Shown in pieces: positions 13,400-59,064 of a DNA stretch of 64,000 nucleotides. Position 1 is the stretch's first letter. Every line of letters starts with the position of its first letter. Position numbers and translations under genes: made by a program. The stretch comes from Octopus bimaculoides (lineage: Eukaryota). Location of the stretch: NCBI RefSeq assembly GCF_001194135.2, contig NC_068983.1:101527064-101591063 (forward strand). The letters run 5' to 3'. The notes under the pieces were generated by a model. The model was not told the origin of the DNA. It saw only the letters and a program-made list of their open reading frames with translations, and ran no database searches.

Positions 13400-14480
13400 C
13401 CTAGTCACATAACTTGTTCTGCATGTGTGTCAAAGTATGAAAAGCCATTTATTCATAACATCGATTTCATAGTTCTACTATAATGCTATATAACATCAGT
13501 ATCTTCATATTTCCCTGAAATGTTATGGTTTAACAACCCCAGGTAGATTGAGTACCTCAAGGAACTCTTTTACTACCGGCTTGAGGCTGTTGTCTTGTCA
13601 CACATCACCATAAATATGAGTACTTTTGAAATCAGGAGAGGCTGATTTGTTTCAAGTGATTTCAGCATAAGTCAAGGTTCCAGTCCCATTCCTTGTGATA
13701 GGGACAGTGTTGTTTCCAATTTGCATCACAAAATTCACAATTTCCAAGTTGGAACAAGGTACTCCATTAATACAGAAAGATTTTGTAGCCTGTTAGTAAG
13801 TAAAACTGTAGGATAACTGAACAATATTCAGGTAAGAAATAATTCAAATTTTTTCCTTGGTTAGGAAAATACAGGTAATATAGAATCATTTTTGTAAGGA
13901 AAGCAGTTACTTTTCTGAAGTTAAGAACAGATATTACTGTCAAGGAATTTTTGGGTATTATACGGCACCAAAATTTTTACTACTCCATTCTGAGAGAAAA
14001 TTATACATAACACTTATTTTATGGCTGAGCTCTTCCAATTAGAAATATGAATAACCTCTAGCCACTTGAAATGGAATTCATGATGATAAGCAGCAATCTG
14101 ATACCATTAACATGGGTATCATCCATGTGTACAAGACTACAGGAATCTAATAAAGTCTACTCTTTTGAAGAAATTTATAACTGTTACACATTTATGACAT
14201 CGATGTATGCAGTCCTCTACAGCATGTGAATAGCCATGCCACATTGCTTCAAACTTTCATATACCTCTAATGCTACAATGAACAGTTATAAATTATATGC
14301 CTTGTGGATACTTTGAGCAGAGCAATAAGACTGAAATCGGAAAGAACATCATTTTCTAGAGTTTGTGTTTGATCCACTAATATTGTCTCTCAGCACTGGA
14401 GCAGTTACTCTAGATATTGTCATTCTGGAAATGATTTTTGCCTAATATCAGATCTTCACACATTCTGAAGGTAGGCTATG
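13400..14480 (-). mobile_element. Decayed Gypsy-like LTR retrotransposon integrase
   Basis: Broken minus-strand translation includes WHGYSHAVEDCIHRCHKC (zinc knuckle), VHMD, FKWLEVIHI and IIFSQNG, resembling integrase core motifs. Contains many stops and frameshifts. Confidence 0.6.
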
Positions 14481-14896
14481 AAGATTTAATAGAACACTTT
14501 CTATCTAGAATATGAAATTATCCTAAACATTATCTGAACTAGTATACTGTGGTTGCACTTTAAAATGTAACTGAGAGAATGTTAATGTGAAAAATAGTGT
14601 GTCCTTTGACATGTGTAATATCTTAATCAAATGCTGTCGGCTGTATGATTTACAAAGATATAAGTTTTGGGAGTTCTTTTTATGTGGTTTAAAGATTAAT
14701 TAGTCTATGATCAGATCTAAGCAAGAATTTTCTGCCAAGGAGCAATTTATGATCCATACTCTTAAGAAAGTTTCCATCTCAATATTTGGATAATTAGTGT
14801 TTAATCTCTTTGACATATACAGTCCTGAATAAAATTCCTAATAAGACTACCCACTACCATCAGTTGTTAATGTAACTTCTTTACTGGTATCAATAT

Positions 14897-14899
<3 letters not shown>

Positions 14900-14969
<70 letters not shown>

Positions 14970-14982
14970 CGCGCGTACACAC
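14900..14982. repeat. (GT)n microsatellite
   Basis: Visible dinucleotide tract. Confidence 0.95.
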
Positions 14983-15119
14983 ACTTTCAAGAATACTTCA
15001 AAAATTATAGAACTTCTTTTCTGAAATTCAACATTTTTCTTGCACAAATTTGAATATCAACTATAAAAGTTTACCAATCCTAAAAACTGACTCCAACTAT
15101 TTCTTATTAGAATGTGAAA

Positions 15120-15420
15120 AAAGCTCCTGTCTTCCTGGGTCTCCCTCTTCTACACATTCCTTATACAGCTGTACACATCTTTCCACATCACATGCCCATA
15201 ACAACAGACTCTTCTCTTACACACTACATCTGATTCCTTTTATGCCCAGTTTTTCTCTCAACATGTTTGTACTCCATCATTCATGGACATTGACATTGCA
15301 CATCCAGCAGAGCCTGCTTGTCTCATTTCTTTGTATTCTTCACATGTCCCGCTATCATGTAGTATTGCCGTTCATGCACAAGAATCCTAGTTTACCTTTC
15401 ACTCTGAGAAACTTCTTGTT
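15120..15420 (-). mobile_element. RTE-clade LINE RT C-terminal fragment
   Basis: Reverse complement includes TTGAGAGAAAAACTGGGCATAAAAGGAATCAGATG...AGACCCAGGAAGAC, homologous to 15880-16240. Confidence 0.6.
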
Positions 15421-15879
15421 AAAAACAGAAGTAACAGCATTATGGACTTTCTCCAGCCTGTTCTTACTCTGGCTACTATACTTTCAGGTCACTTTCTCCT
15501 ATAGCTCATAAGGTCGCCTAAGTAACAAAAACTATCAACTACTTCTAGAGAAACTTATCATTTGAGGAAGTCTATTTTTGCGCGCATTTAGTGTTTATTG
15601 TTCCTGCACATCTGCCACTTACAAAGTCTGCTTACTCTATCAACCTGTGATTCCACTGTATAAGATTCCTATCAATTCCACTTCAACAGATCAAGCAAAA
15701 TCATTTACCTGATGGAAGTTTTTGCTAAGTTGACTTTAACTAAATTAAATTTTGATTCCAGGTTTGTTTCAGAGAACTATTACTTCCATTGAGAACAGAA
15801 GTTTTCTCTCACAGAATGAAACGAGATTGTATGAACAGCAATGCTACAGGATAGTGAGACATGGGCTCTGAATAAAGAG

Positions 15880-16240
15880 ATAGTGAGACATGGGCTCTGA
15901 ATAAAGAGAACATGTGTAAACCAGAAAGAAACAAAGCTAGAAAGCTCCATTGGATGTGCAGTTAGTGCACATAACAAGGTACAAATGTGTTGAGAGAAAA
16001 ATTGGGCATAAGAGGAATCAGATGAGGTGTGCAAGAGAGATGACTGCACTGGTATAGACATGTAATGCACATGGATGAGAACAACTGTATAAAGAAGTGC
16101 CACTCACTTGTGGAAGTGAGAGACCCAGGAAGATATGGGACTAAATAGTGAAAGCTGATTTCAGGACTTCAAATTGCACTGAAGAAATGATAAAAGACTA
16201 AGATGACTGATGATATGCAGTGCTCAAGAGAACCTGCCCA
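15880..16240 (+). mobile_element. RTE-clade LINE RT C-terminal fragment
   Basis: Degenerate LREKLGIRGIRCGVQERRLRWYGHVMRM...RPRKTW-like coding remnant. Confidence 0.6.
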
Positions 16241-17029
16241 TCTCAGTGGAACTAAGATTCTGGAAGTATATTATCAATATACACAATTGAGCCCCTCACG
16301 CAGTTTCCTTGTCAAACCTGCTCCTCCACCTTTCATTTCTCTATCACTGGTCTTAGCATCACTTGTCTGACTGCAATATTCTGCTGCTGTAATTAAATGA
16401 GAGCAGAACTCCATATCTTATTTTTTCAGTGATACTATTTAACTTTCATACAACATAGAACCACTTGACATCCATCCTTTATTGCTCCTATTACCATACA
16501 TCTCTCCACAATCCTCTCCACTGAACTACTTCCTTTTGATTTGCCTGTATCACCGTACATCTCTCATTGTCCCCAAGTACTATGTCCTCTCTACACACAC
16601 TTGCAACCTCCCCAACTATATGTCATCTCTCTTTCTTTCATCCTTCTCCTGTCTACTGATGCTCTTTACCTTTCTGTACAGCCAGTCAGCACCTACTTCC
16701 TCAAATCTCCTCCACCTTTCTCTACATTCAACTCTATACCTTTCTTAATCTCTAGTCATCATCTACTTGCCATCAAACTCATATTTATCATTGAACACCA
16801 CACCTGTCTCAACCCTTTTATTCTTTTACATGTTTCAATCATTAGACTGTGCCCATGCTGAGGTACGACTGCATTGAAGAATTTTAGTCAAATTCACCAA
16901 CTCCAGTACTTTTAATTTTTACTTATTCTATTGGTCTCTTTTAGAGAACCACTAAGTTATGGGAACCTAAACAAATCAACAGTATTATATTTGACAGAGT
17001 AATCTGAATACTAAAGGGTTAATTGAAGT

Positions 17030-18950
17030 TGTTACTGCTTAACTTGTTTACTTCTTATACTGCCTTTAATATTCTATGAATTTACATAATCAAGAGTTAC
17101 TCGTCTCTTCTGTTCTATATTGAGTACATTCACATCAAGAGTCTTCACTGTGAACACCAATGATTTCAACAAGAAAGTCCATAGTCTTTATTTTAATTCA
17201 TCCAATCTGGTTATTCCGAACAGTTTACACTAGCTAATCTGCTCTGTATTTTAAATCATGGACTGACCCATTTTCTCTCCAAATACACCACTTTGATCTT
17301 CCAAACTTAGCCTCTGTTCTGGTGTCTCCATTGCCTGATCATTGGTTTCCTCAATGCATATTACTTCACATCAAAATATTGCCTAATATCTTCAGCTCCT
17401 CTAAAGAACAGAATCAGTAAATTGATCAGGCCTCTAATATATCAACTACTCACTAATGGCAGAAAATATGTTATTTCTGACTCTGCAACTGAATGAGTGA
17501 CAGAAACTTTCTCCGAACTTAAGAAATCAATATCAAAGCCCATACTCCAGCCTCTTCAAAACAGCTTACATGGATGCTGTAGTGCAGCTGTATATTAAAA
17601 AAATACATCCTACAGTCATCATCACCATCATTCATCTGTTTTCCATGCTGGCATGGAATGGACAGTTTGACTAGAGCTGGAAAGCAGGCGAACTGCACCA
17701 GGTTCCAGTCTGATTTGGTTCGGTTTCTATGGTTAGATTCCTTTCCTAACACCAACAACTTTATAGAGAATGCACCAGCATGGGTGATAGCAGCTGTGCT
17801 CTTGCAGGCCAATCCTCTTCAGGAGGAGAAGCAGCGATAACAATTCTGCTGACCAGCCGTTACAAGCTGCAAGTTTTGATCTGCAAATGAAATGCTTAAC
17901 ATATGACATTGAAGAAGAAACAAGATGCTGATGTGTAGTATATCATTTTTTTAAATTCCTCCTTAACTGTAGCTATGTTGGTATTTACCTCAAAGAATAT
18001 CATTTAAATATTCTGCTTCACCTGAAATGAAAGGGTTCTGTAAACAAGTATAATTCCAACTGGGTCCTATTTTTGCAGGTATTTAACAAACATAATACCC
18101 CTATTCAAAAAGAGAAAATTCTCTGATGCTATGAGCAACTAACCTATAACATTCAATCTTTCTCCAGTTTCTTGCAGTACATATCCACTAGAAAATTTCT
18201 CTCAAATCATACTAATGCACTCTTGTCCTTAAGACTTTTAGATTCATTCTTGAGCCAGTACTAACAGTATACAAATTAGAAATCTTCTTAAGTTATTTAT
18301 TGGTAACATTGCACATGCAAGCATTTGGGACTAAATCCAAGAAAATGTCAATACTCCTCAACCACATTCCTACTCCTGAGTGGTATTCTTCATTTGTCTT
18401 TACTTTCCTGCAATTGCTGCTTGTAAACTACTTAAGTCCGCCAATTTTATTTCCCCCTCATCACTGCTAAATATTTCAGTCTCCCAAACACTGACTCAAC
18501 AGTTCATTAACTCTGTCTCACAAAGAGTTTTTTGACGTTCGTTCTGCATTTTGGTTGATCGAAAATCTATATCAGCCCGTGTGTTTCATCCAACTACTAA
18601 CTTATATCCTGAAAGTAATTGCATTTGGACAGCCTTGTGCTATGCACATAAGATTCCAAGGCCGGATCCTAATGAAGACCACTTGATTAATTGTTAGAGA
18701 GTCAATAAACCAACACGTTTTAATCACCAGCACACAGATGCATCCCTTCTTCCATCTACCTCCTGCATTTCTATAGTGGTCCTCTGTATTACCTAGCAGC
18801 ATGTTTTCTCGATCCAAACCAATCTAACTTCACTCGTAACATCATACACTATCTCTCTCTCATCTCCTACATCCCACACTAAACATTTTTCCCAATCCTT
18901 CTTGCCATCGAGAAGTTCAATCCTCTGGAACTCCTACCCCACCCAGGCGT
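17030..18950 (-). mobile_element. Old LINE remnant (endonuclease/RT-like), interrupted by an RTE 3' fragment at about 17615-17790
   Basis: Purine-rich, coding-like minus strand with many stops. The clade is not securely identified. Confidence 0.3.
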
Positions 18951-20519
18951 CGTTATACAGATATTCAAGCAGAACATCAACTGCATCAGTCTCACTAGTC
19001 TCAGTGAACCTGTTAGGTAAAATGGAGACAGCTGATTCTCCGATTAACTTATAAAATATTTTTTAGTGTGCTGACATCCATCGAACAAGGACGGCATCGT
19101 ATTCTCAAATAAACCACAAAATAAAAATAAAAATAGTAATAAAAAATTGGATAAATATAGGTTTTTAGATATCTACTTAGACTGGATGTCACAAACTTGA
19201 TTAAACCATACTGGTTTAACCAAAACCAGTATGGAGCAAGGAATGAAAATTAATTTGAAGTAATCAAAGGGAAATGGTCCCATTGAAATAAAATACTACA
19301 GAGCCGCATGAAGCATGCAAAAAAAAAAAAAAATTTTTTAATCAATGTAGATTGCTAACGCCAAAAGTGAAGATGTATTAATCTTTTCAAATGAGCTAAG
19401 ACACTCTTAGGAATGATTAAGAATGTAGATATGAAAAAGGGGGGAAAAATTCAAATATCTGAAACGTTTCAATTTTTATGACAAGATATTTTGCTTATCT
19501 GAAATTGGGGTGTAGTCAGTATATCTCTCCTCAAGTAAAGTGGAGAAAGAAAATCATTTGAAATCATACGGAGAAAAAAATGACATAACAATAAATAACA
19601 GTAACCAGGAATTACGCTTAGCCCCACTAATTCGCAAACATTGAAGATAACAAGAATTAGAAAATTCTGCAACATATCATTATTCGAATCTTAATTTCGT
19701 AATTGTTTGAGAAAGGCATGACCATCAAACAGTTCCGGAGTCAATGTGATATAAATTGTTGTTGTCTATTTCATATCTCGTAGCAGTAGAGAACTTTAGG
19801 ACGATATGATAAATCATTGTCTATTTCATATCTCAGAACAGCTGACAACGTTTAAGACAAATACACAGCATATTACGTTTTCTTTTAATTTGAAAAAAAA
19901 AAAGACTGAATGAAGTAAATGTATATGTTAAACTGAAAGTATGTCTGCTGCAGACACGAAAAATCCAGATTTCATAGTTACCATGCGATGAGTTGTAATG
20001 ATGTGTTGAATGAAATGTAAACTCATGTCATACACTTCACTAATGTGCAAACCCCACCCCTAAAAAGTCAATAAATAAATTTCAGTTTAATTCGTTTAGG
20101 CTAAATATAGATAGCATTGGTGAAATCTTGGGAGTCACGGTCAGAGATGCATAATATACTTCATAATTGTTCGAGTGACAAGCAAATGTATTATAACAGT
20201 TAATGAAATTAAATCCCTCTCTTTTACATTAAAGAATAATAATAGTCAAGAATGAATAAAATAATCTGAATTAGAATGGATTTTGAAAGTACATTCTGTA
20301 TGCTTTCCTTTTCGAAGAAAGCGTTTGACCTTTCCAAAGACATTAAAGGTTGATATAAAAATAACGTACTTACAAACCTTACAGATTTAAATGCATTATA
20401 TGGAAAGTAGTGTTTTATTAGTTACCAGCTAAGCAATGCAGATTTGAGATTGTATAAAAATTAAAGATTAGTCTAAAAAAAAATCAGAGATTTACAGAAA
20501 AGGCTATAAATACACTCAC

Positions 20520-20548
20520 CCGAAATGGCCTCGCAACAAATGCATCAT
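20520..20548 (-). CDS. OPA1: OPA1 coding exon 1 (MMHLLRGHFG; start of the mitochondrial presequence)
   Basis: Minus strand reads ATG ATG CAT TTG TTG CGA GGC CAT TTC GG|gtgagt. The phase-2 end matches the phase-2 acceptor at 11425, and human OPA1 also has a short phase-2 first coding exon. Assignment rests on phase, donor quality and position, not strong homology. Confidence 0.75.
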
Positions 20549-28640: not shown

Positions 28641-29340
28641 AAATTAGAATTGATAGGTAATTAATGTTCAAACAACAGAAGGGAAAAGAAAATGAGGAAG
28701 AAATAAAACTTTCTGGTTATATTGCATCTTCATAAAATAAAATAAACTTGCTAATTATTAAGTAATGAAGTATTATTATTCCTACTGTTGCAAGTATTGA
28801 ATTTTTAAGTTTTATAAAACAATACATTTCTAAAAATTTAGCAGTGAAAGAAAAATGCATTTTCTTTTTAGCTACTGATTTCTTTTAATAGTGTAGGTGT
28901 TAATGTCGGAAAGGTTGATGTTTAACCTTAAGTCAGCCTGACACTTGATCTAGCTGACCTACAATTAAAGGCCTTCTAGATAAGACCATCCTGTCTTTCT
29001 TTTTTTTTTATAGACACAGTGCAGTGCATATCTTAGTTGCCATGTGTACATGATTTGTAGGCTAAGTACAGCTTATCTCTGCTTGTTATAAAAGACAACT
29101 AAAATGGGTGGCAGAAAAGTGAACATTAAAATGATGAGGATGATGACAGGTATATTGTGGATTACATTATCCACTGTGTCCTTTTTTTTTTAAAGATATT
29201 AGTGTGTTGTATGAAGGAAATTGGGCTGCAGTTTTAGCATGTCTGGTGACAATATAGAGGATTGTTCTTTGGAAAATTAACCCATTGGTAACATGCTCAT
29301 TTTCAAATTAAACATCTGTTTTTAAAAGAATATTTTTTCA

Positions 29341-29720
29341 GGCATGGCTGTGTGGTAAAAAGCTTGCTTCCCAACTGCATGGTTCTGGGTTCAATCCTAT
29401 TGCATGTCACCTTGGGCAAGTGTCATCTACTATAGTCTTGGGCCAACCAAAGCCTTGGCCTTGTGAGTAGATTTGGTGGATAGAAACTGAAAGAAGCCTG
29501 TAGTATATATATATGTGTGTGTGTGTGTCTGTGTTTACAACCAGAGCTAATGTGTTTACATCCCTGTAACTTAACAGTTCAGCATAAGAGACCAATAGAA
29601 TAAGTATCAGGCTTCAAAAAAATAAGTACTGTGGTTTGATACATTCAACTAAAAGTTCTTCAGGGCAGTGCCTCAGCATGGTTGCAGTCTAATGACTGAA
29701 ATGAGTAAAAAATAAAAGAT

Positions 29721-29722
<2 letters not shown>
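29341..29722 (+). mobile_element. tRNA-derived CORE-type SINE (full length)
   Basis: Head GGCATGGCTGTGTGGTAA..GGTTCAATCC, CORE-like CACCTTGGGCAAGTG, central (TA)n(TG)n tract, tail ending AATAAAAGATAA. Confidence 0.85.
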
Positions 29723-29766
<44 letters not shown>

Positions 29767-29768
29767 AG

Positions 29769-29855
29769 ATGCGTCATTTGTTTCTGATTATTGATATGTC
29801 TGAAGCCATGGTGGATCCTGATTTAAAACCCAACAGATTAGCAGCTACTGTCAAA
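29769..29855 (+). CDS. GTF2H2: GTF2H2 coding exon 3 (MRHLFLIIDMSEAMVDPDLKPNRLAATVK)
   Basis: (T)42gcag|ATG...AAA|gtatgt, 87 nt. Start of the vWA domain. Confidence 0.95.
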
Positions 29856-30405
29856 GTATGTTTTATTATTATTCTTTTTCTACATTCTTTAATCAAAACT
29901 AAAAATCTAAATTTAAACTGCTAAAATTGTTATTAACTCTGTCTATATTAAGTTTTTAGTTCCATTTGTTTTACTTTTCCAAAGTTGAATACCACTTCTT
30001 CAGTTATCTTATTTGCTTTTAAATCTTCTCAGACTACTGTCACCATTTTCCTACAGAACATTTGAGCTCAAGCCAGCAAGATATTTTTTGTGTCACTCAA
30101 TCTGCTCAACATAGATATTTCTCTAGAAACTCCTTTTGTTAATATGATCTCATATTTCAAATCTTTAAACATCTTTAAAAAACTTATTTTTAAAATCATA
30201 GATGTGACTTGAATGTTGATCATATTTTGAAATTTGACCCTAACTGTGCTTATCCAAGTATCTTAGCCCCTGGGTTACAGTTTTAAATTTCTAATTGACT
30301 ACATTGTTACTCCATGCAACAGGTCTGCTCAAGCAATGACAATCATACAATCTGATATGTCGCATGAATTTCTTATTTCTAATAAGTAATTATTTCCGTG
30401 GTCTC

Positions 30406-31260
30406 TTTACACTTAAGTTGTCTCTTAGCTAATCATTATGCATCCACTAGGTCATACTTCACTCATTCCTACTCCATCAGTGTTCATTTTATGCATTCAT
30501 AGGCTTTCTTCCACTGATATATCAGCTCTCTTACACAGTCATCATACGTTTTTCAAATTACATATAAAAATATTTCTTGATTTCAGTTGAGTCAAAAAGA
30601 AGTCCCCTCCTACTTCTCTCTCTATATTTACCACACTACTCCTGAAACTGATTGATTGACTATCAGCTAACATTTCTCCTGTTGTCAGCCAATCTGTTTT
30701 GGCCACCAACACTATGAACTAATCATTTACTCAATCCTTGCTCCCTAAAGCAGTGTTACCAGAGTTTCCCTCCCCACCAATGCAGTTCCTGCTGGCATTG
30801 ACCTAAGGTATTCAAATTGAATATAACCTGTTTTGATCTCACCAGTCACAGAGGACTTGTGAAGATTGTGGGCATAGATCCTGCATTGGTGGGGAGGGAA
30901 ACTCTGGTAACACTGCTTTAGGGAGCAAGGATTGAGTAAATGATTAGTTCATGGTGTTGGTGGCCGAAACAGATTGGCTGACAACAGGAGAAATGTTAGC
31001 TGATAGTCAATCAATCAGTTTCAGGAGTAGTGTGGTAAATATAGAGAAAGAAGTAGGAGGGGACTTCTTTTTGACTCAACTGAAATCAAGAAATATTTTT
31101 ATATGTAATTTGGAAAACGTATGATGACTGTGTAAGAGAGCTGATATATCAGTGGAAGAAAGCCTATGAATGCATAAAATGAACACTGATGGAGTAGGAA
31201 TGAGTGAAGTATGACCTAGTGGATGCATAATGATTAGCTAGGAGACAACTTAAGTGTAAA
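30406..31260. repeat. Long inverted repeat: two 380-bp arms (30406-30785 and 30881-31260) with a 95-bp spacer
   Basis: Manual comparison gives 5 substitutions and no indels across 380 bp. Confidence 0.95.
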
Positions 31261-31772
31261 GCCATGAAAATAAAGAAACAAAAAGATTTAAGTCTATTGT
31301 TAATCTGGAGGCCAAGCCTCAGGGAAATACCATTGCATAGACAGTCATGAGTGGTGACACTGCATTGAACCAGCCTCTGCTGTGAGGCTTAGAGGCTGAG
31401 TGGAAGAATGCCAGATGGTGCTGGTTAAGTGAGCACATTAACTCATCTGAGCTCAACCAAGTTGTTTACTGTCTACTCCAGTAATATTGAATTTTTATGA
31501 ATGAATGAATGAATGAATACTTTTGTCAAAGCCATCTTTCTGTTTAAATCTTTTAACCTGAAAAATCACTCTTACCTGTTTTGTACTTTTGAAACACTAA
31601 TTAATTTTTTAGATTCAAGTTACCTTATAAAACATCCTATAAATACCAATTCTGAATTGATTTTTCAATACTGAGGATTGTAATTGTTGCTTTGTTATTT
31701 TGTATACATTTATTGATTAATTTATATAACTGTTCTCTGTTCATAAAATAAGTAATTATTTCTTTTCTACAG

Positions 31773-31878
31773 CTTGCTGAAAATTTCATTGAAGAATACT
31801 TTGATCAAAACCCTATTAGTCAGCTTGGTATTATTGTAACACGAAAGAAAAGAGCTGAAAAAGTTACTGAACTTGGTG
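31773..31878 (+). CDS. GTF2H2: GTF2H2 coding exon 4 ([35 protein letters not shown])
   Basis: ctacag|CTT...GGT G|gtttgt, 106 nt. Contains the conserved [10 protein letters not shown]. Confidence 0.95.
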
Positions 31879-31914: not shown

Positions 31915-32168
31915 TTTTACTTAGAATAGACGGATAAGTGTCCATCTTGATTGTTGTTCATCAGTTGTTCTGGTGGAATTTTGAGCTCAACCCTTTATTT
32001 GACTAATGGGGTACACTGTTCTCATTCCTAGATATGTTGATTTTATTTTTCAAGTCCCTCCCTGCGATTGAACTTAGTATCCGAAGGTTAGTAGCCCACA
32101 CTCTTATCTACTATGCTATGTGCCTGTGAGCAATTATAGAGTGACTTTTAGGGCTTGTAAACCTAGTG
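31915..32168 (-). mobile_element. Second locus of the tRNA-headed hammerhead-motif element, left (inverted) arm
   Basis: Reverse complement shows the tRNA-like head, AGGAATGAGAAC, CTGATGA (31958-31964) with stem II/GAAA deleted, and the family tail ACAACAATCAAGATGGACAC. Confidence 0.7.
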
Positions 32169-32398: not shown

Positions 32399-32710
32399 TT
32401 TTATTTTAGTTGTTTTAGTCATGTGACTGTGGCCATGCTAAAGCACTGCCTTTGATTGAAAAAGATTGACCACAGGGATTTATTCTTTGTAAGCCTAGTA
32501 CTTATTCTCTTAGTGTCTTTTGCCGAACCGCTAAGTTATGGAAACATAAACACAGCGACGTCGGTTGTCAAGCAATGGTGTGAGTACAAACACACACGCA
32601 CACACACACACACACACACAAACAAACAAATATACACATATATACAACAGTCTTCTTTCAGTTTCCCTGTATGAAATCCACTCACAAGGCTTTGGTTGAC
32701 CTGAGGCTAT
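32399..32710 (-). mobile_element. CORE-type SINE lacking the tRNA head
   Basis: Tail, microsatellite and part of the body match the family. Confidence 0.8.
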
Positions 32711-32714
32711 AATA

Positions 32715-32752
<38 letters not shown>

Positions 32753-33151
32753 CTCACCAGCCCTCAGTCAAACCGTCCAACCCATGCCAGCATGGAAAGC
32801 AGACGTTAAACGATGATGATGATGATATATATACGGTTTGACTGAGGACAGGCAAGCCAGAAGGCTGCACCAGGCTCCAATCAGATCTGGCAAAAGTTTC
32901 CACAGCTGGATGCCCTTCCTAACTCCAGCCACTCCGAGAGTGTAGTGGATGCTTTTATGTGACACCGGCACGGGTGCCAGTCAGGCGATTCTGGTAGCGA
33001 CCACGCTCAAAAAGTAATGTGCCACCGACACGGGAGCCAATCTGTGGCCCTGGCAACTATCACAATCAGATGTGCTTCTAACGTTCTACTGGTATGAGTG
33101 CCAATCAGACAGTACTGTCATCGGCCACGTCAGTGATTTTGATTTTGATTT

Positions 33152-33868
33152 CACTTGGTTTATAAGCCCTAAAAGTCACTCTATAATTGCTACTCACTCT
33201 CGGATACTAAGTTCAATCACAGGCAGGGACTTGAAAAATAATGTCAACTGAAAAATCACATCAGCAGCATACCTTAGGAATGAGAACAGTGTACCCCATT
33301 AGTCAAATAAAGGGTTGGGTTCGAAATTCCACCAGAACACCTCTTTTACTTGTTTCAGTCATTTAACTGCGGCCATGCTGGAGCACCACCTTTAATCGAG
33401 CAAATCGACCCCAGGACTTATTCTTTGGATGCCTAGTACTTATTCTATCGGTCTGTTTTTGCCGAACCGCTAAGTTACGGGGACGTAAACACACCAGCAT
33501 CGGTTGTCAAGCAATGTTGGGGGGGACAAACACAAACACACAGACATACACACACACATATATATATATATATACATATATATATACGACAGGCTTCTTT
33601 CAGTTTCCGTCTACCAAATCCACTCACAAGGCTTTGGTCGGCCCGAGGCTATAGTAGAAGACACTTGCCCAAGGTGCCACGCAGTGGGACTGAACCCGGA
33701 ACCATGTGGTTGGTAAGCAAGCTACTTCCCACACAGCCACTCCTACGCCTATTGAAGGCTGGAGCGTACATCAGCCAGAACGTTGTGATAACAACAAACA
33801 AGATGAAGACACTTATCCATCCATTGTAAATAATGTACATGATTCCTCATCTCAAAAATACAGAATAA
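33152..33868 (+). mobile_element. Second locus, right arm, interrupted by a CORE-type SINE at 33343-33752
   Basis: Shares an approximately 40-bp leader and body with the left arm. Resumes as TGAAGGCTGGAGCGTACATCAGCCAGAACGTTGTG after the insertion. Confidence 0.7.
33343..33752 (-). mobile_element. tRNA-derived CORE-type SINE (young, CpG-rich copy)
   Basis: Same family as 29341-29722; closely similar to 61828-62225. Confidence 0.88.
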
Positions 33869-57240: not shown

Positions 57241-57297
57241 CATACATACTATATGGTGTGTGTGTGTGTGTATGTATGTATATATNNNNNNNNNNNN

Positions 57298-57328: not shown

Positions 57329-58019
57329 AAGGTTTGAAAATGCAATTTTAAAGATGTTTATTCACTTGACCAGTTTCACTTTTTTTAGAAAAAGATTGTC
57401 AAAAGTAAAATGTAAAGCTTTGTATAAGCTTTGTTGTGTCAAGTATTGGTTGTCACAAAAGTATTAAAATACATATATACATTCTTTGATAATAATAAGA
57501 AAATGTTAAAAATAGTTTACAAGAAAGTATTCAACAAAAAGTATTAGGAGTTCAATAAAAATCATGTTTGTTTGGTAGTATATATATACACAGGAGATAT
57601 ATTTAAGAATTTACAAAATATTGGAGAGGAATAACTGACCTGTCTGTCTGACATTTTCTGTCTTGTGTGTAGCTAAGGAATGTTTGCTATTTTAAGGGAC
57701 AGTGTGGGAGGCTGGATGGGGTGGGGGGAAGGAAATACACACACACACACCATCCTGCCAAATATAAAACACACACAGACCCATATGCACACACCACAAT
57801 AAACTCTGGGACCAATCAAAAATAGCCCATACACACAAACACAAACACAGGTATATACATACACACACATACAGACATGCACAGAGACACACACACTCAC
57901 ACCATTCTGATCTCAAAGACCACTGTCCCAAAAACCACTGACAGACTAGCCCAGAAACAAAAAAAACCTTTTAATTCCACATTGCTCTTCCTTCCCCCAC
58001 CCCAACCAACCTCCCACAC

Positions 58020-58375
58020 TGTATGAATATTTGATGTGGTTTTAGAGTCAAGTTTTGACTGCTATATCTAGCATGATGGTATCTTTTAGATACCCTTAAT
58101 TATAACTTCAATAATAATTATTACCTATGAGGTTTTTATTCCCATGTTAGCCACTTGATATGATTGGTATTTTAAATAATGATCTTATCCTTATTTATAT
58201 ATATTTCACTGCGTGGCACCTTGGGCAAGTGTCTTCTACTGTAGCCTCAGGCCGACCAAAGCCTTGTGAGTGGATTTGATAGATGGTGGTGTATGAATAT
58301 TTGATGTGGTTTTAGAGTCAAGTTTTTACTGCTATATCTAGCATGATGGTATCTTTTAGATACCCTTAATTATAA
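58020..58375 (+). repeat. 86-bp direct duplication (58020-58105 and 58290-58375)
   Basis: The two copies differ at one position and bracket a SINE fragment. Confidence 0.9.
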
Positions 58376-59064
58376 TTTTATATAAATATATTCACACACA
58401 CTATACGTACATACATACATATATATATATATATACACACACACATACTCATGAGAATTTGTTTATATACACACATGCACATATACACTAATACATACAT
58501 GTATACTTTGGCTGGATAATTTTTATTGCTGGTCTGGATCAAATGTTTTTACTACTGGCTGCTCTTCCTATCTCTAACTCCTTGACTGGTGAAGCAGGAA
58601 TGCAATGCCTCTTTTATGAGCCCTGGAAACTGGTGCAAGCAGACTTATGTACCTTACTCAGAGACATATCAAGCTGAATCTATGATGAGTGTATCAAAGG
58701 AGTGGAGCAACATATGTTCACAAAACAGGATATCACAGTAATGGTTTAATATCTTCAATATATTTGTAAGTAAAGCTCTAACATTTATAAATAGGATCTG
58801 TTGGCTATGATTAGTGGGTGGAGCAAGCGTTCTCTGTGCCTGGGTGTAAAGACAGGCATGAGGATATTTTGTTCTCATATATCTTTTACTTGAGGTTCCC
58901 CACCTTAATTAACTGGTATGATAAGCAAGAGGAAATAACTTCATGCTCTTTCAATGAGAAATTTAATTAGAATGATTTTGCCTATTGACTGATGATAATT
59001 TCATAGTAAGCCATGTCCTCTTATAATTCTTTATTAAAGTTCACAAATATTTCTTTCTACTATA

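What the first reader, a model, noticed from the sequence alone, without database searches (positions are those of the whole stretch)
30406..31260. Near-perfect 380-bp hairpin in GTF2H2 intron 3
Seen: the arms (30406-30785, 30881-31260) have only 5 substitutions, no indels and a 95-bp spacer. On the transcribed strand four mismatches are G-U wobbles and one is A-C. The arm does not match other repeats I recognised in this window, and I see no TSD. Known: long dsRNA of this kind is a prime substrate for ADAR hyper-editing and Dicer, and such palindromes are unstable in DNA. Inference: a recent fold-back duplication that may yield endogenous siRNAs, act as an editing hub, or shorten the effective intron. 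The wobble bias is too small a sample to show selection.
Basis: partly seen in the sequence, partly recalled or inferred. Interest (0 to 1): 0.7.

Follow-up and report, generated by a model that had tools for sequence, protein, structure and literature searches.

The report
Young fold-back duplication in octopus intron
In the California two-spot octopus, about 375 bases of an intron of the TFIIH gene GTF2H2 were copied backwards next to themselves roughly 6 million years ago, making a real but probably neutral 381-bp hairpin of a known kind.

Summary
Arms 30405-30785 and 30881-31261 are 381 nt each, with 5 transition mismatches, no indels and a 95-nt spacer. On the sense strand the mismatches are 4 G·U and 1 C·A.

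The window is Octopus bimaculoides. The hairpin sits in the middle of GTF2H2 intron 3 (29856-31772, + strand).

O. vulgaris and O. sinensis carry the left arm and spacer as ordinary single-copy intron sequence and lack only the right arm. Where they read GATC-CT-CTTTCAGAC-AAAG-CCATG, O. bimaculoides reads GATC-CT-[375 nt reverse complement of the left arm]-AAAG-CCATG. That is one templated inverted insertion, with a 9-nt loss and 2-nt and 4-nt junction microhomologies. This is the signature of a fold-back or template-switch replication or repair error, not of a transposon: there is no TSD and no whole-element empty site.

Arm divergence (K=0.013) against species divergence (K≈0.075, about 34 My) dates it to about 6 My ago.

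Function was not testable here. The pre-mRNA must form a 381-bp dsRNA. Published work makes ADAR hyper-editing the likely fate in octopus and endo-siRNA production unlikely, because molluscs lack a dedicated siRNA pathway.

It is a clean, datable example of a known mutation class. Interest is low to moderate.

The parts
29769..29855 (+). GTF2H2 coding exon 3 (…MRHLFLIIDMSEAMVDPDLKPNRLAATVK)
   Evidence: tblastn with the O. bimaculoides protein P0121. An AG acceptor precedes 29769 and the GTATGT donor starts at 29856.
29856..31772 (+). GTF2H2 intron 3 (1917 nt, GT..AG), which hosts the hairpin. The hairpin lies 549 nt from the 5' splice site and 511 nt from the 3' splice site.
   Evidence: The orthologous intron is about 1.74 kb in O. 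vulgaris and O. sinensis and about 0.63 kb in Argonauta.
30405..30785 (+). Left arm: ancestral intron sequence that served as the template for the copy
   Evidence: It aligns colinearly with its flanks to O. vulgaris L001 ~17229-17570 and O. sinensis L004 ~18545-18883 at 88-90% identity.
30786..30880 (+). 95-nt spacer (loop): ancestral intron sequence
   Evidence: 93.7% identical and colinear in O. vulgaris and O. sinensis.
30881..30882 (+). Junction 1 microhomology, CT. It is shared by the resident sequence (GATC-CT-CTTT in O. vulgaris) and by the reverse complement of the left-arm end (GGAA-CT-GCATT).
30883..31257 (+). Newly made segment: 375 nt, the reverse complement of 30409-30783. It is absent from O. 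vulgaris and O. sinensis, which have 9 nt here instead (CTTTCAGAC / CCTTCAGAC).
31258..31261 (+). Junction 2 microhomology, AAAG. It is shared by the resident flank (GAC-AAAG-CCATG in O. vulgaris) and by the reverse complement of the left-arm start (GTGT-AAAG-AGACC).
31773..31878 (+). GTF2H2 coding exon 4 ([36 protein letters not shown])

Best explanation
The hairpin is the product of one lineage-specific mutation in Octopus bimaculoides.

Origin. During replication or break repair, a growing + strand 3' end at ...GATCCT (30882) left its template. It re-annealed by 2 nt (CT:AG) about 95 nt upstream, either on its own strand (fold-back) or on the opposite template. It copied 375 nt of intron 3 backwards. 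It then returned to the original template through a 4-nt match (AAAG), skipping 9 nt. This created a perfect 381-bp inverted repeat with a 95-nt loop.

Age. The two arms have since picked up five independent transitions, at least two in the left arm and at least one in the right. That puts the event about 6 My ago (rough 95% range 2-14 My).

Consequence. The repeat is transcribed as part of the GTF2H2 pre-mRNA, so it must fold into a 381-bp dsRNA stem. This step is inferred, not shown. In octopus the most likely fate is ADAR hyper-editing, followed by removal and decay with the spliced intron. It is most likely selectively neutral.
For: Shown:
1. The window is O. bimaculoides, 100% identical over 45,755 bases to GCA_001194135.2.
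2. GTF2H2 is on the + strand, and the hairpin is central in intron 3.
3. O. vulgaris and O. sinensis come from two independent assemblies. Both have the left arm and spacer in place and an 11-nt CT-CTTTCAGAC (CT-CCTTCAGAC in O. sinensis) where the right arm sits.
4. The absent segment matches the right arm exactly, apart from the 2-nt and 4-nt overlaps.
5. Both O. bimaculoides arms share the 23-nt, 8-nt and 2-nt indels that separate them from O. vulgaris.
6. K2P distance between the arms is 0.0133. Each arm differs from O. vulgaris by 0.082, with 27 differences each.
7. Polarised mismatches fall on both arms: 30700 and 30713 are C>T in the left arm, and 31113 is A>G in the right arm.
8. The local clock looks sound. 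O. vulgaris-O. sinensis K = 0.007 scales to about 3 My, against the published 2.5 My. The 34 My split is from PMC10700109.
9. The stem folds at -735 kcal/mol with only the C·A position unpaired.

From the literature:
- Template switching makes perfect hairpins in a single event (PMC10710096).
- Octopus hyper-editing is extreme and tracks long near-perfect dsRNA (PMC5625713).
Against: - No reads or independent O. bimaculoides assembly could be examined, so the structure rests on one short-read-derived assembly (PMC9068888).
- The only further outgroup, Argonauta, has a short intron 3 that cannot be aligned. The direction of change (gain in O. bimaculoides rather than loss in the vulgaris/sinensis lineage) therefore rests on arm similarity and the exact coincidence of boundaries, not on outgroup parsimony.
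- A 2-nt microhomology at junction 1 is weak by itself, with a chance probability of about 0.1.
- A 375-nt copy is much longer than the short template-switch events of the kind in the papers found here, so the exact enzymology (replicative switch or break-primed fold-back synthesis) is undetermined.
- Transcription, editing and neutrality are all inferred.
Confidence: 0.82

Rival explanations
1. Assembly artefact: O. bimaculoides really has one arm, and the second was created by mis-threading or gap closure in the short-read assembly.
For: The contig-level sequence comes from the 2015 shotgun assembly, which was only re-scaffolded with Hi-C (PMC9068888). Inverted repeats are hard for de Bruijn assemblers. 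No independent reads could be checked: exact look-ups of right-arm ORFs found nothing.
Against: - The arms differ at 5 sites (1.3%), all transitions. The right arm keeps the ancestral base at two sites where the left arm is derived, and carries its own derived base elsewhere. A copy of the same reads would be identical.
- Two specific junctions (GATCCT|GCATTGG and GTGTAAAG|CCATG) would both have to be chimeric.
- The nearest N run is 26 kb away, at 57286-57297.
- Missed-adapter fold-back chimeras are an artefact of long-read libraries, and none were used here. That point is my own knowledge.
Confidence: 0.07
2. Ancient palindrome: both arms predate the O. bimaculoides / O. vulgaris split. They have been kept alike by arm-to-arm gene conversion, and the vulgaris/sinensis lineage deleted one arm.
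For: No alignable outgroup is available. Palindrome arms in other genomes are known to be homogenised by conversion (my own knowledge). Palindromes are prone to deletion.
Against: - The deletion would have had to remove exactly one arm, to within 2-4 nt at each end, and leave an unrelated 9-nt filler. Palindrome-stimulated deletions have no reason to do that.
- The microhomology pattern fits an insertion by copying.
- The arm-versus-species distances are symmetric, with 27 differences each, as expected for a recent copy.
Confidence: 0.05
3. Foldback transposon or MITE with long terminal inverted repeats, inserted into the intron.
For: The shape (long TIRs and a short loop) resembles foldback elements. 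The octopus genome is repeat-rich.
Against: - The orthologous 'empty' site is not empty: the left arm and spacer are resident sequence, colinear with both flanks in two other species.
- There is no TSD.
- No second copy exists in the 64-kb window or in about 130 kb of loci from three other octopods.
- The arms have no coding or tRNA-like content.
Confidence: 0.02
4. Functional small-RNA locus (hpRNA / endo-siRNA or a new miRNA source) maintained by selection. The origin would be the same, but with a regulatory role.
For: - The geometry resembles Drosophila hpRNA genes (my own knowledge).
- 4 of 5 mismatches keep pairing in the sense RNA.
- Intronic template-switch hairpins have seeded miRNAs in primates (PMC10710096).
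Against: - It is absent from O. vulgaris and O. sinensis.
- Wobble retention is not significant (P = 0.19).
- Arm divergence from O. vulgaris equals that of the surrounding intron, 0.082 against 0.075.
- The arms match nothing else in the available sequence, so no trans target is seen.
- Molluscs, including O. bimaculoides, show no siRNA-type Ago or Dicer and almost no Dicer-signature pairs (PMC12479628).
- There is no Rfam match inside the hairpin.
Confidence: 0.04

Closest known systems
Template-switch mutations (Ripley quasi-palindrome model; Löytynoja & Goldman four-point model; Mönttinen et al. 2023, PMC10710096)
   Same: A single event replaces a few bases with the reverse complement of adjacent sequence. 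This instantly makes a perfect hairpin in an intron that is already transcribed. Mismatches accumulate afterwards.
   Different: This copy is 375 nt with a 95-nt loop. The primate events discussed in that paper give miRNA-sized stems. No small-RNA product is shown here.
Fold-back inversions / inverted duplications by fold-back priming or MMBIR/FoSTeS (PMC2621351, PMC3907307, PMC7467729, PMC10622511, PMC11724301)
   Same: An inverted copy sits next to its source, separated by a short single-copy spacer. Both breakpoints show short microhomology, and a small deletion lies at the return point.
   Different: The copying ended after 375 nt and returned to the original template. The result is a small interstitial insertion rather than a dicentric or terminal kb-to-Mb duplication. 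It is germline and old, not somatic or pathological.
ADAR hyper-editing substrates in octopus (Porath et al. 2017, PMC5625713)
   Same: A long, nearly perfect intramolecular dsRNA within a transcription unit, in a species where 0.44% of sampled loci can form such structures.
   Different: Most such structures are attributed to pairs of inverted repeat-family copies or to palindromic transposons. This one is made from unique intron sequence by local duplication. Editing at this locus was not examined.
Drosophila hpRNA (endo-siRNA) genes
   Same: A stem of several hundred base pairs made by inverted duplication.
   Different: hpRNA arms derive from, and target, other genes, and they need Dicer-2/AGO2. 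Here the arms are the gene's own intron. The lineage lacks that pathway according to PMC12479628.

Membership tests
Template-switch / fold-back inverted duplication | The new segment is the exact reverse complement of nearby resident sequence | tested here: met
   30883-31257 is the reverse complement of 30409-30783, with 5 later substitutions.
Template-switch / fold-back inverted duplication | Related genomes keep the source sequence but lack the copy (pre-event state observable) | tested here: met
   [quoted passage not shown] Polarity by an outgroup could not be tested, because the Argonauta intron does not align.
Template-switch / fold-back inverted duplication | Microhomology at the switch points, and no target-site duplication | tested here: met
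   CT (2 nt) at junction 1 and AAAG (4 nt) at junction 2. No TSD.
Foldback transposon / MITE | The whole element is absent from an orthologous empty site and is flanked by a TSD | tested here: not met
   Only one arm is absent in the sister lineage, and there is no TSD.
Foldback transposon / MITE | Multiple dispersed copies in the genome | tested here: inconclusive
   None in the 64-kb window or in the three loci from other octopods. The whole O. bimaculoides genome could not be searched with these tools.
ADAR hyper-editing substrate | Long near-perfect intramolecular dsRNA in a transcribed region | tested here: met
   A 381-bp stem at -735 kcal/mol on the sense strand of a GTF2H2 intron. Transcription is inferred from the gene models.
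ADAR hyper-editing substrate | Clustered A-to-G changes in RNA reads | not testable with these tools
   No RNA-seq access.
hpRNA / endo-siRNA locus | 21-22-nt Dicer products, and siRNA-class Ago and Dicer in the organism | not testable with these tools
   No small-RNA data here. The literature reports no dedicated siRNA pathway in molluscs (PMC12479628).
Known structured RNA / miRNA family | Match to an Rfam covariance model | tested here: not met
   No hit inside 30405-31261 at E ≤ 1. No tRNA in the window.

The most novel reading that the evidence does not exclude
Fold-back copying of hundreds of bases of unique sequence may be a recurrent mutation in octopus genomes. If so, it would contribute materially to their unusually high load of long near-perfect dsRNA and hence to their extreme ADAR hyper-editing. 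This locus would then be a datable, junction-resolved example rather than a one-off.
Probability: 0.12. Interest if true: 0.55.

Novelty: new member of a known kind. Interest (0 to 1): 0.27.

Why it matters
The locus shows both the pre-event and post-event sequences, both junctions and a molecular date for a mid-sized (375-nt) fold-back copy. Events of this size fall between the tens-of-bp template switches studied in primates and the kb-to-Mb inverted duplications of human disease and yeast.

It also shows that long dsRNA in octopus pre-mRNA can arise from unique sequence, not only from pairs of repeats. It offers a natural test substrate for cephalopod ADAR: 381 bp, of known age, inside a ubiquitously needed gene.

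None of this changes current understanding. It is a tidy example, not a surprise.

Tried and rejected
1. Transposon reading. I searched the arm and spacer at low stringency against the window and all fetched loci. Only the two arms and their orthologues matched. I looked for a TSD and found none. Rejected.

2. Known RNA families and tRNA-derived SINEs. Rfam at E ≤ 1 gave nothing inside the hairpin, only two weak sub-threshold hits near 32546-32764. ARAGORN found no tRNA.

3. Outgroup polarity with Argonauta hians. Its intron 3 is about 630 nt and aligns only next to the exons, so it is uninformative.

4. Independent evidence for the right arm. I made exact look-ups of the two right-arm-specific ORFs (57 and 50 aa). 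Neither is on record. This is uninformative, because such ORFs are rarely called as genes.

5. Selection on pairing. 4 of 5 mismatches are wobbles, binomial P = 0.19. 5 of 5 are transitions, against a local 64% transition share, P ≈ 0.11. Neither is significant.

6. Other fresh fold-backs nearby. No other inverted repeat of 95% or more was found in the window or the three loci.

Full report
**Observation**

The inverted repeat is real. The repeat finder reports arms 30405-30785 and 30881-31261: 381 nt, 99% complementary, 95 nt apart. A base-by-base comparison finds 5 mismatches, all transitions, and no indels. Complementarity ends abruptly at the outer ends and at the spacer.

On the + strand the mismatches are four U·G and one C·A. 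The 857-nt unit folds as RNA into one continuous stem at -735 kcal/mol, against -213 ± 6 for shuffles (z = -85). Only the C·A position is unpaired. Otherwise the description is accurate.

**Where it is**

A database search with the joined pieces returned GTF2H2 of Octopus at E = 1e-238, with Ssl1, VWA_2 and C1_4 domains. [quoted passage not shown]

I fetched their loci. The window is 100% identical over 45,755 bases to O. bimaculoides GCA_001194135.2 chromosome CM046603.1.

With the O. bimaculoides protein P0121, coding exon 3 is 29769-29855 and exon 4 is 31773-31878. Intron 3 is 29856-31772 (GT..AG, 1917 nt). The hairpin takes up the middle 45% of the intron. It lies 549 nt from the donor and 511 nt from the acceptor. 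OPA1 lies upstream on the other strand and does not overlap.

**What the relatives show**

This is the decisive result. O. vulgaris (L001) and O. sinensis (L004) align to the window at about 92% identity. In both, the left flank, left arm and spacer align as one colinear block. The right arm finds only a reverse-strand match to that same block.

The multiple alignment makes the junction explicit:

| Species | Sequence at the junction |
|---|---|
| O. vulgaris | …GGGCATAGATC-CT-CTTTCAGAC-AAAG-CCATGAAAA… |
| O. sinensis | same, with CCTTCAGAC as the 9-nt filler |
| O. bimaculoides | …GGGCATAGATC-CT-[GCATTGG…AAGTGT, 375 nt]-AAAG-CCATGAAAA… |

- The 375 nt are the reverse complement of 30409-30783.
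- CT is shared with the reverse complement of the left-arm end (GGAA-CT-GCATT).
- AAAG is shared with the reverse complement of the left-arm start (GTGT-AAAG-AGACC).

The difference between the lineages is therefore one templated inverted insertion of 375 nt, a 9-nt loss, and 2-nt and 4-nt junction microhomologies. No target-site duplication is present.

Both O. bimaculoides arms share the 23-nt, 8-nt and 2-nt indels that distinguish them from O. vulgaris. The copy was therefore made well after the lineages had diverged.

**Not a transposon**

The 'empty site' in the sister lineage still contains one arm and the loop, colinear with both flanks. No other copy of the arm or spacer exists in the window or in the loci of the three other octopods. 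There is no Rfam or tRNA signal in the hairpin, and its ORFs are 57 aa or shorter. A genome-wide copy count could not be done with these tools.

**Age**

| Comparison | K2P distance |
|---|---|
| Left arm vs right arm | 0.0133 (5/381) |
| Each arm vs O. vulgaris | 0.082 (27 differences each) |
| Whole aligned region, O. bimaculoides vs O. vulgaris | 0.075 |
| O. vulgaris vs O. sinensis | 0.007 |

PMC10700109 cites a split of about 34 My for O. bimaculoides versus the vulgaris/sinensis clade, and 2.5 My for O. vulgaris versus O. sinensis. The local clock reproduces the second date (about 3 My). It places the duplication at about 6 My, with a Poisson range on 5 substitutions of roughly 2-14 My. 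This is a minimum age if the arms have exchanged sequence by gene conversion.

Polarising the mismatches with the sister lineage gives the following:
- 30700 (a CpG) and 30713 are C>T in the left arm.
- 31113 is A>G in the right arm.
- 31048 is probably G>A in the right arm, although the alignment there is ambiguous.
- 30425/31241 cannot be polarised.

Both arms have therefore evolved independently since the event.

**Artefact?**

The contig sequence comes from the 2015 shotgun assembly, which was later scaffolded with Hi-C (PMC9068888). I could not inspect reads, and exact look-ups of right-arm-specific ORFs returned nothing.

Against an artefact:
- The arms differ by 1.3%, with derived states on each.
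- Two specific junctions would both have to be chimeric.
- The nearest gap is 26 kb away.

I put the artefact reading at about 7%.

**Ancient palindrome plus loss?**

No outgroup aligns here, because Argonauta's intron 3 is about 630 nt. However, a deletion in the vulgaris/sinensis lineage would have had to remove exactly one arm to within 2-4 nt at each end. The microhomology pattern is what copying predicts. I put this reading at about 5%.

**Mechanism**

*Shown:* the before and after sequences, both junctions, and the age.

*Inferred:* a 3' end at 30882 annealed by CT:AG to 30784-30785, either on its own strand or on the opposite template. It was extended back to 30405/30409, then re-annealed by AAAG to the original template 9 nt downstream of where it had left. 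This is the template-switch or fold-back class described for quasi-palindromes, for primate hairpins (PMC10710096), and for MMBIR and fold-back inverted duplications (papers listed). Whether it was a replicative switch or break-primed synthesis cannot be told from the sequence.

**Consequences**

The sense transcript must contain a 381-bp near-perfect duplex. Porath et al. report that O. bimaculoides has one of the two highest hyper-editing rates among the animals they surveyed. They also report that hyper-editing tracks long, near-perfect dsRNA, which 0.44% of sampled octopus loci can form (PMC5625713). ADAR editing of this stem is therefore the most likely fate.

A mollusc-wide survey that included O. 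bimaculoides found no siRNA-class Ago or Dicer and almost no Dicer-signature read pairs (PMC12479628). Endo-siRNA production is therefore unlikely.

Nothing suggests selection:
- The structure is absent in the sister lineage.
- The arms diverge from O. vulgaris at the same rate as the surrounding intron.
- The 4:1 wobble excess has P = 0.19.

The 95-nt spacer and an apparent persistence of about 6 My argue that the DNA is tolerably stable.

**Verdict**

This is a genuine, young, lineage-specific fold-back duplication of unique intron sequence. It belongs to a known mutation class, and its origin is unusually cleanly resolved. Its RNA-level role is untested and probably nil beyond being an ADAR substrate.

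Noticed in passing
window 29340-29625 vs 32480-32717 and 33556-33744: Older inverted copies (72-85% complementary) of one repeat family lie in intron 2 and intron 4. They bracket exons 3 and 4 and the young hairpin. This geometry could pair across the two exons in the pre-mRNA.
   Followed up: no
window 31963-32095 vs 33189-33342: Another inverted pair (88-94% complementary, about 1.1-1.2 kb apart) lies inside intron 4. A matching 220-nt pair at 85% sits at the corresponding place in O. vulgaris (L001 18555-20082) and O. sinensis.
   Followed up: no
L001 45323-45672; L004 46275-46625; window about 58019-58488: An older palindromic element is shared by the three Octopus species downstream of GTF2H2. 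Its arms are about 175 nt and about 84% complementary, and the core 95-nt arms are 93% complementary with a 12-nt loop in O. vulgaris. Part of the O. bimaculoides sequence aligns in the opposite orientation.
   Followed up: partly
L001 16705-16929 (O. vulgaris intron 3); L004 about 18022-18246: The vulgaris/sinensis lineage has its own insertion of about 225 nt in intron 3, absent from O. bimaculoides. It is an inverted copy (79-80%) of a repeat about 1.6 kb upstream, at L001 14973-15134.
   Followed up: no
window 29721-29764: An uninterrupted T run of about 40 nt ends just upstream of the exon 3 acceptor.
   Followed up: no
window 29503-29534 and 32584-32637: (GT)n and (AC)n microsatellites lie in opposite orientation on either side of exons 3-4.
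   Followed up: no
window 57286-57297: The only assembly gap in the window is a run of 12 N.
   Followed up: no
window 13833-20548 (- strand): The 3' part of an OPA1 / dynamin-family gene lies head-to-head upstream of GTF2H2. This arrangement is conserved in O. vulgaris, O. sinensis and Argonauta.
   Followed up: no
P0001 (416 aa) and P0122 (447 aa) vs P0121 (403 aa): The O. vulgaris and O. sinensis X1 gene models carry N-terminal extensions that the O. bimaculoides, Argonauta and O. sinensis X2 models lack. These are probably annotation differences.
   Followed up: no
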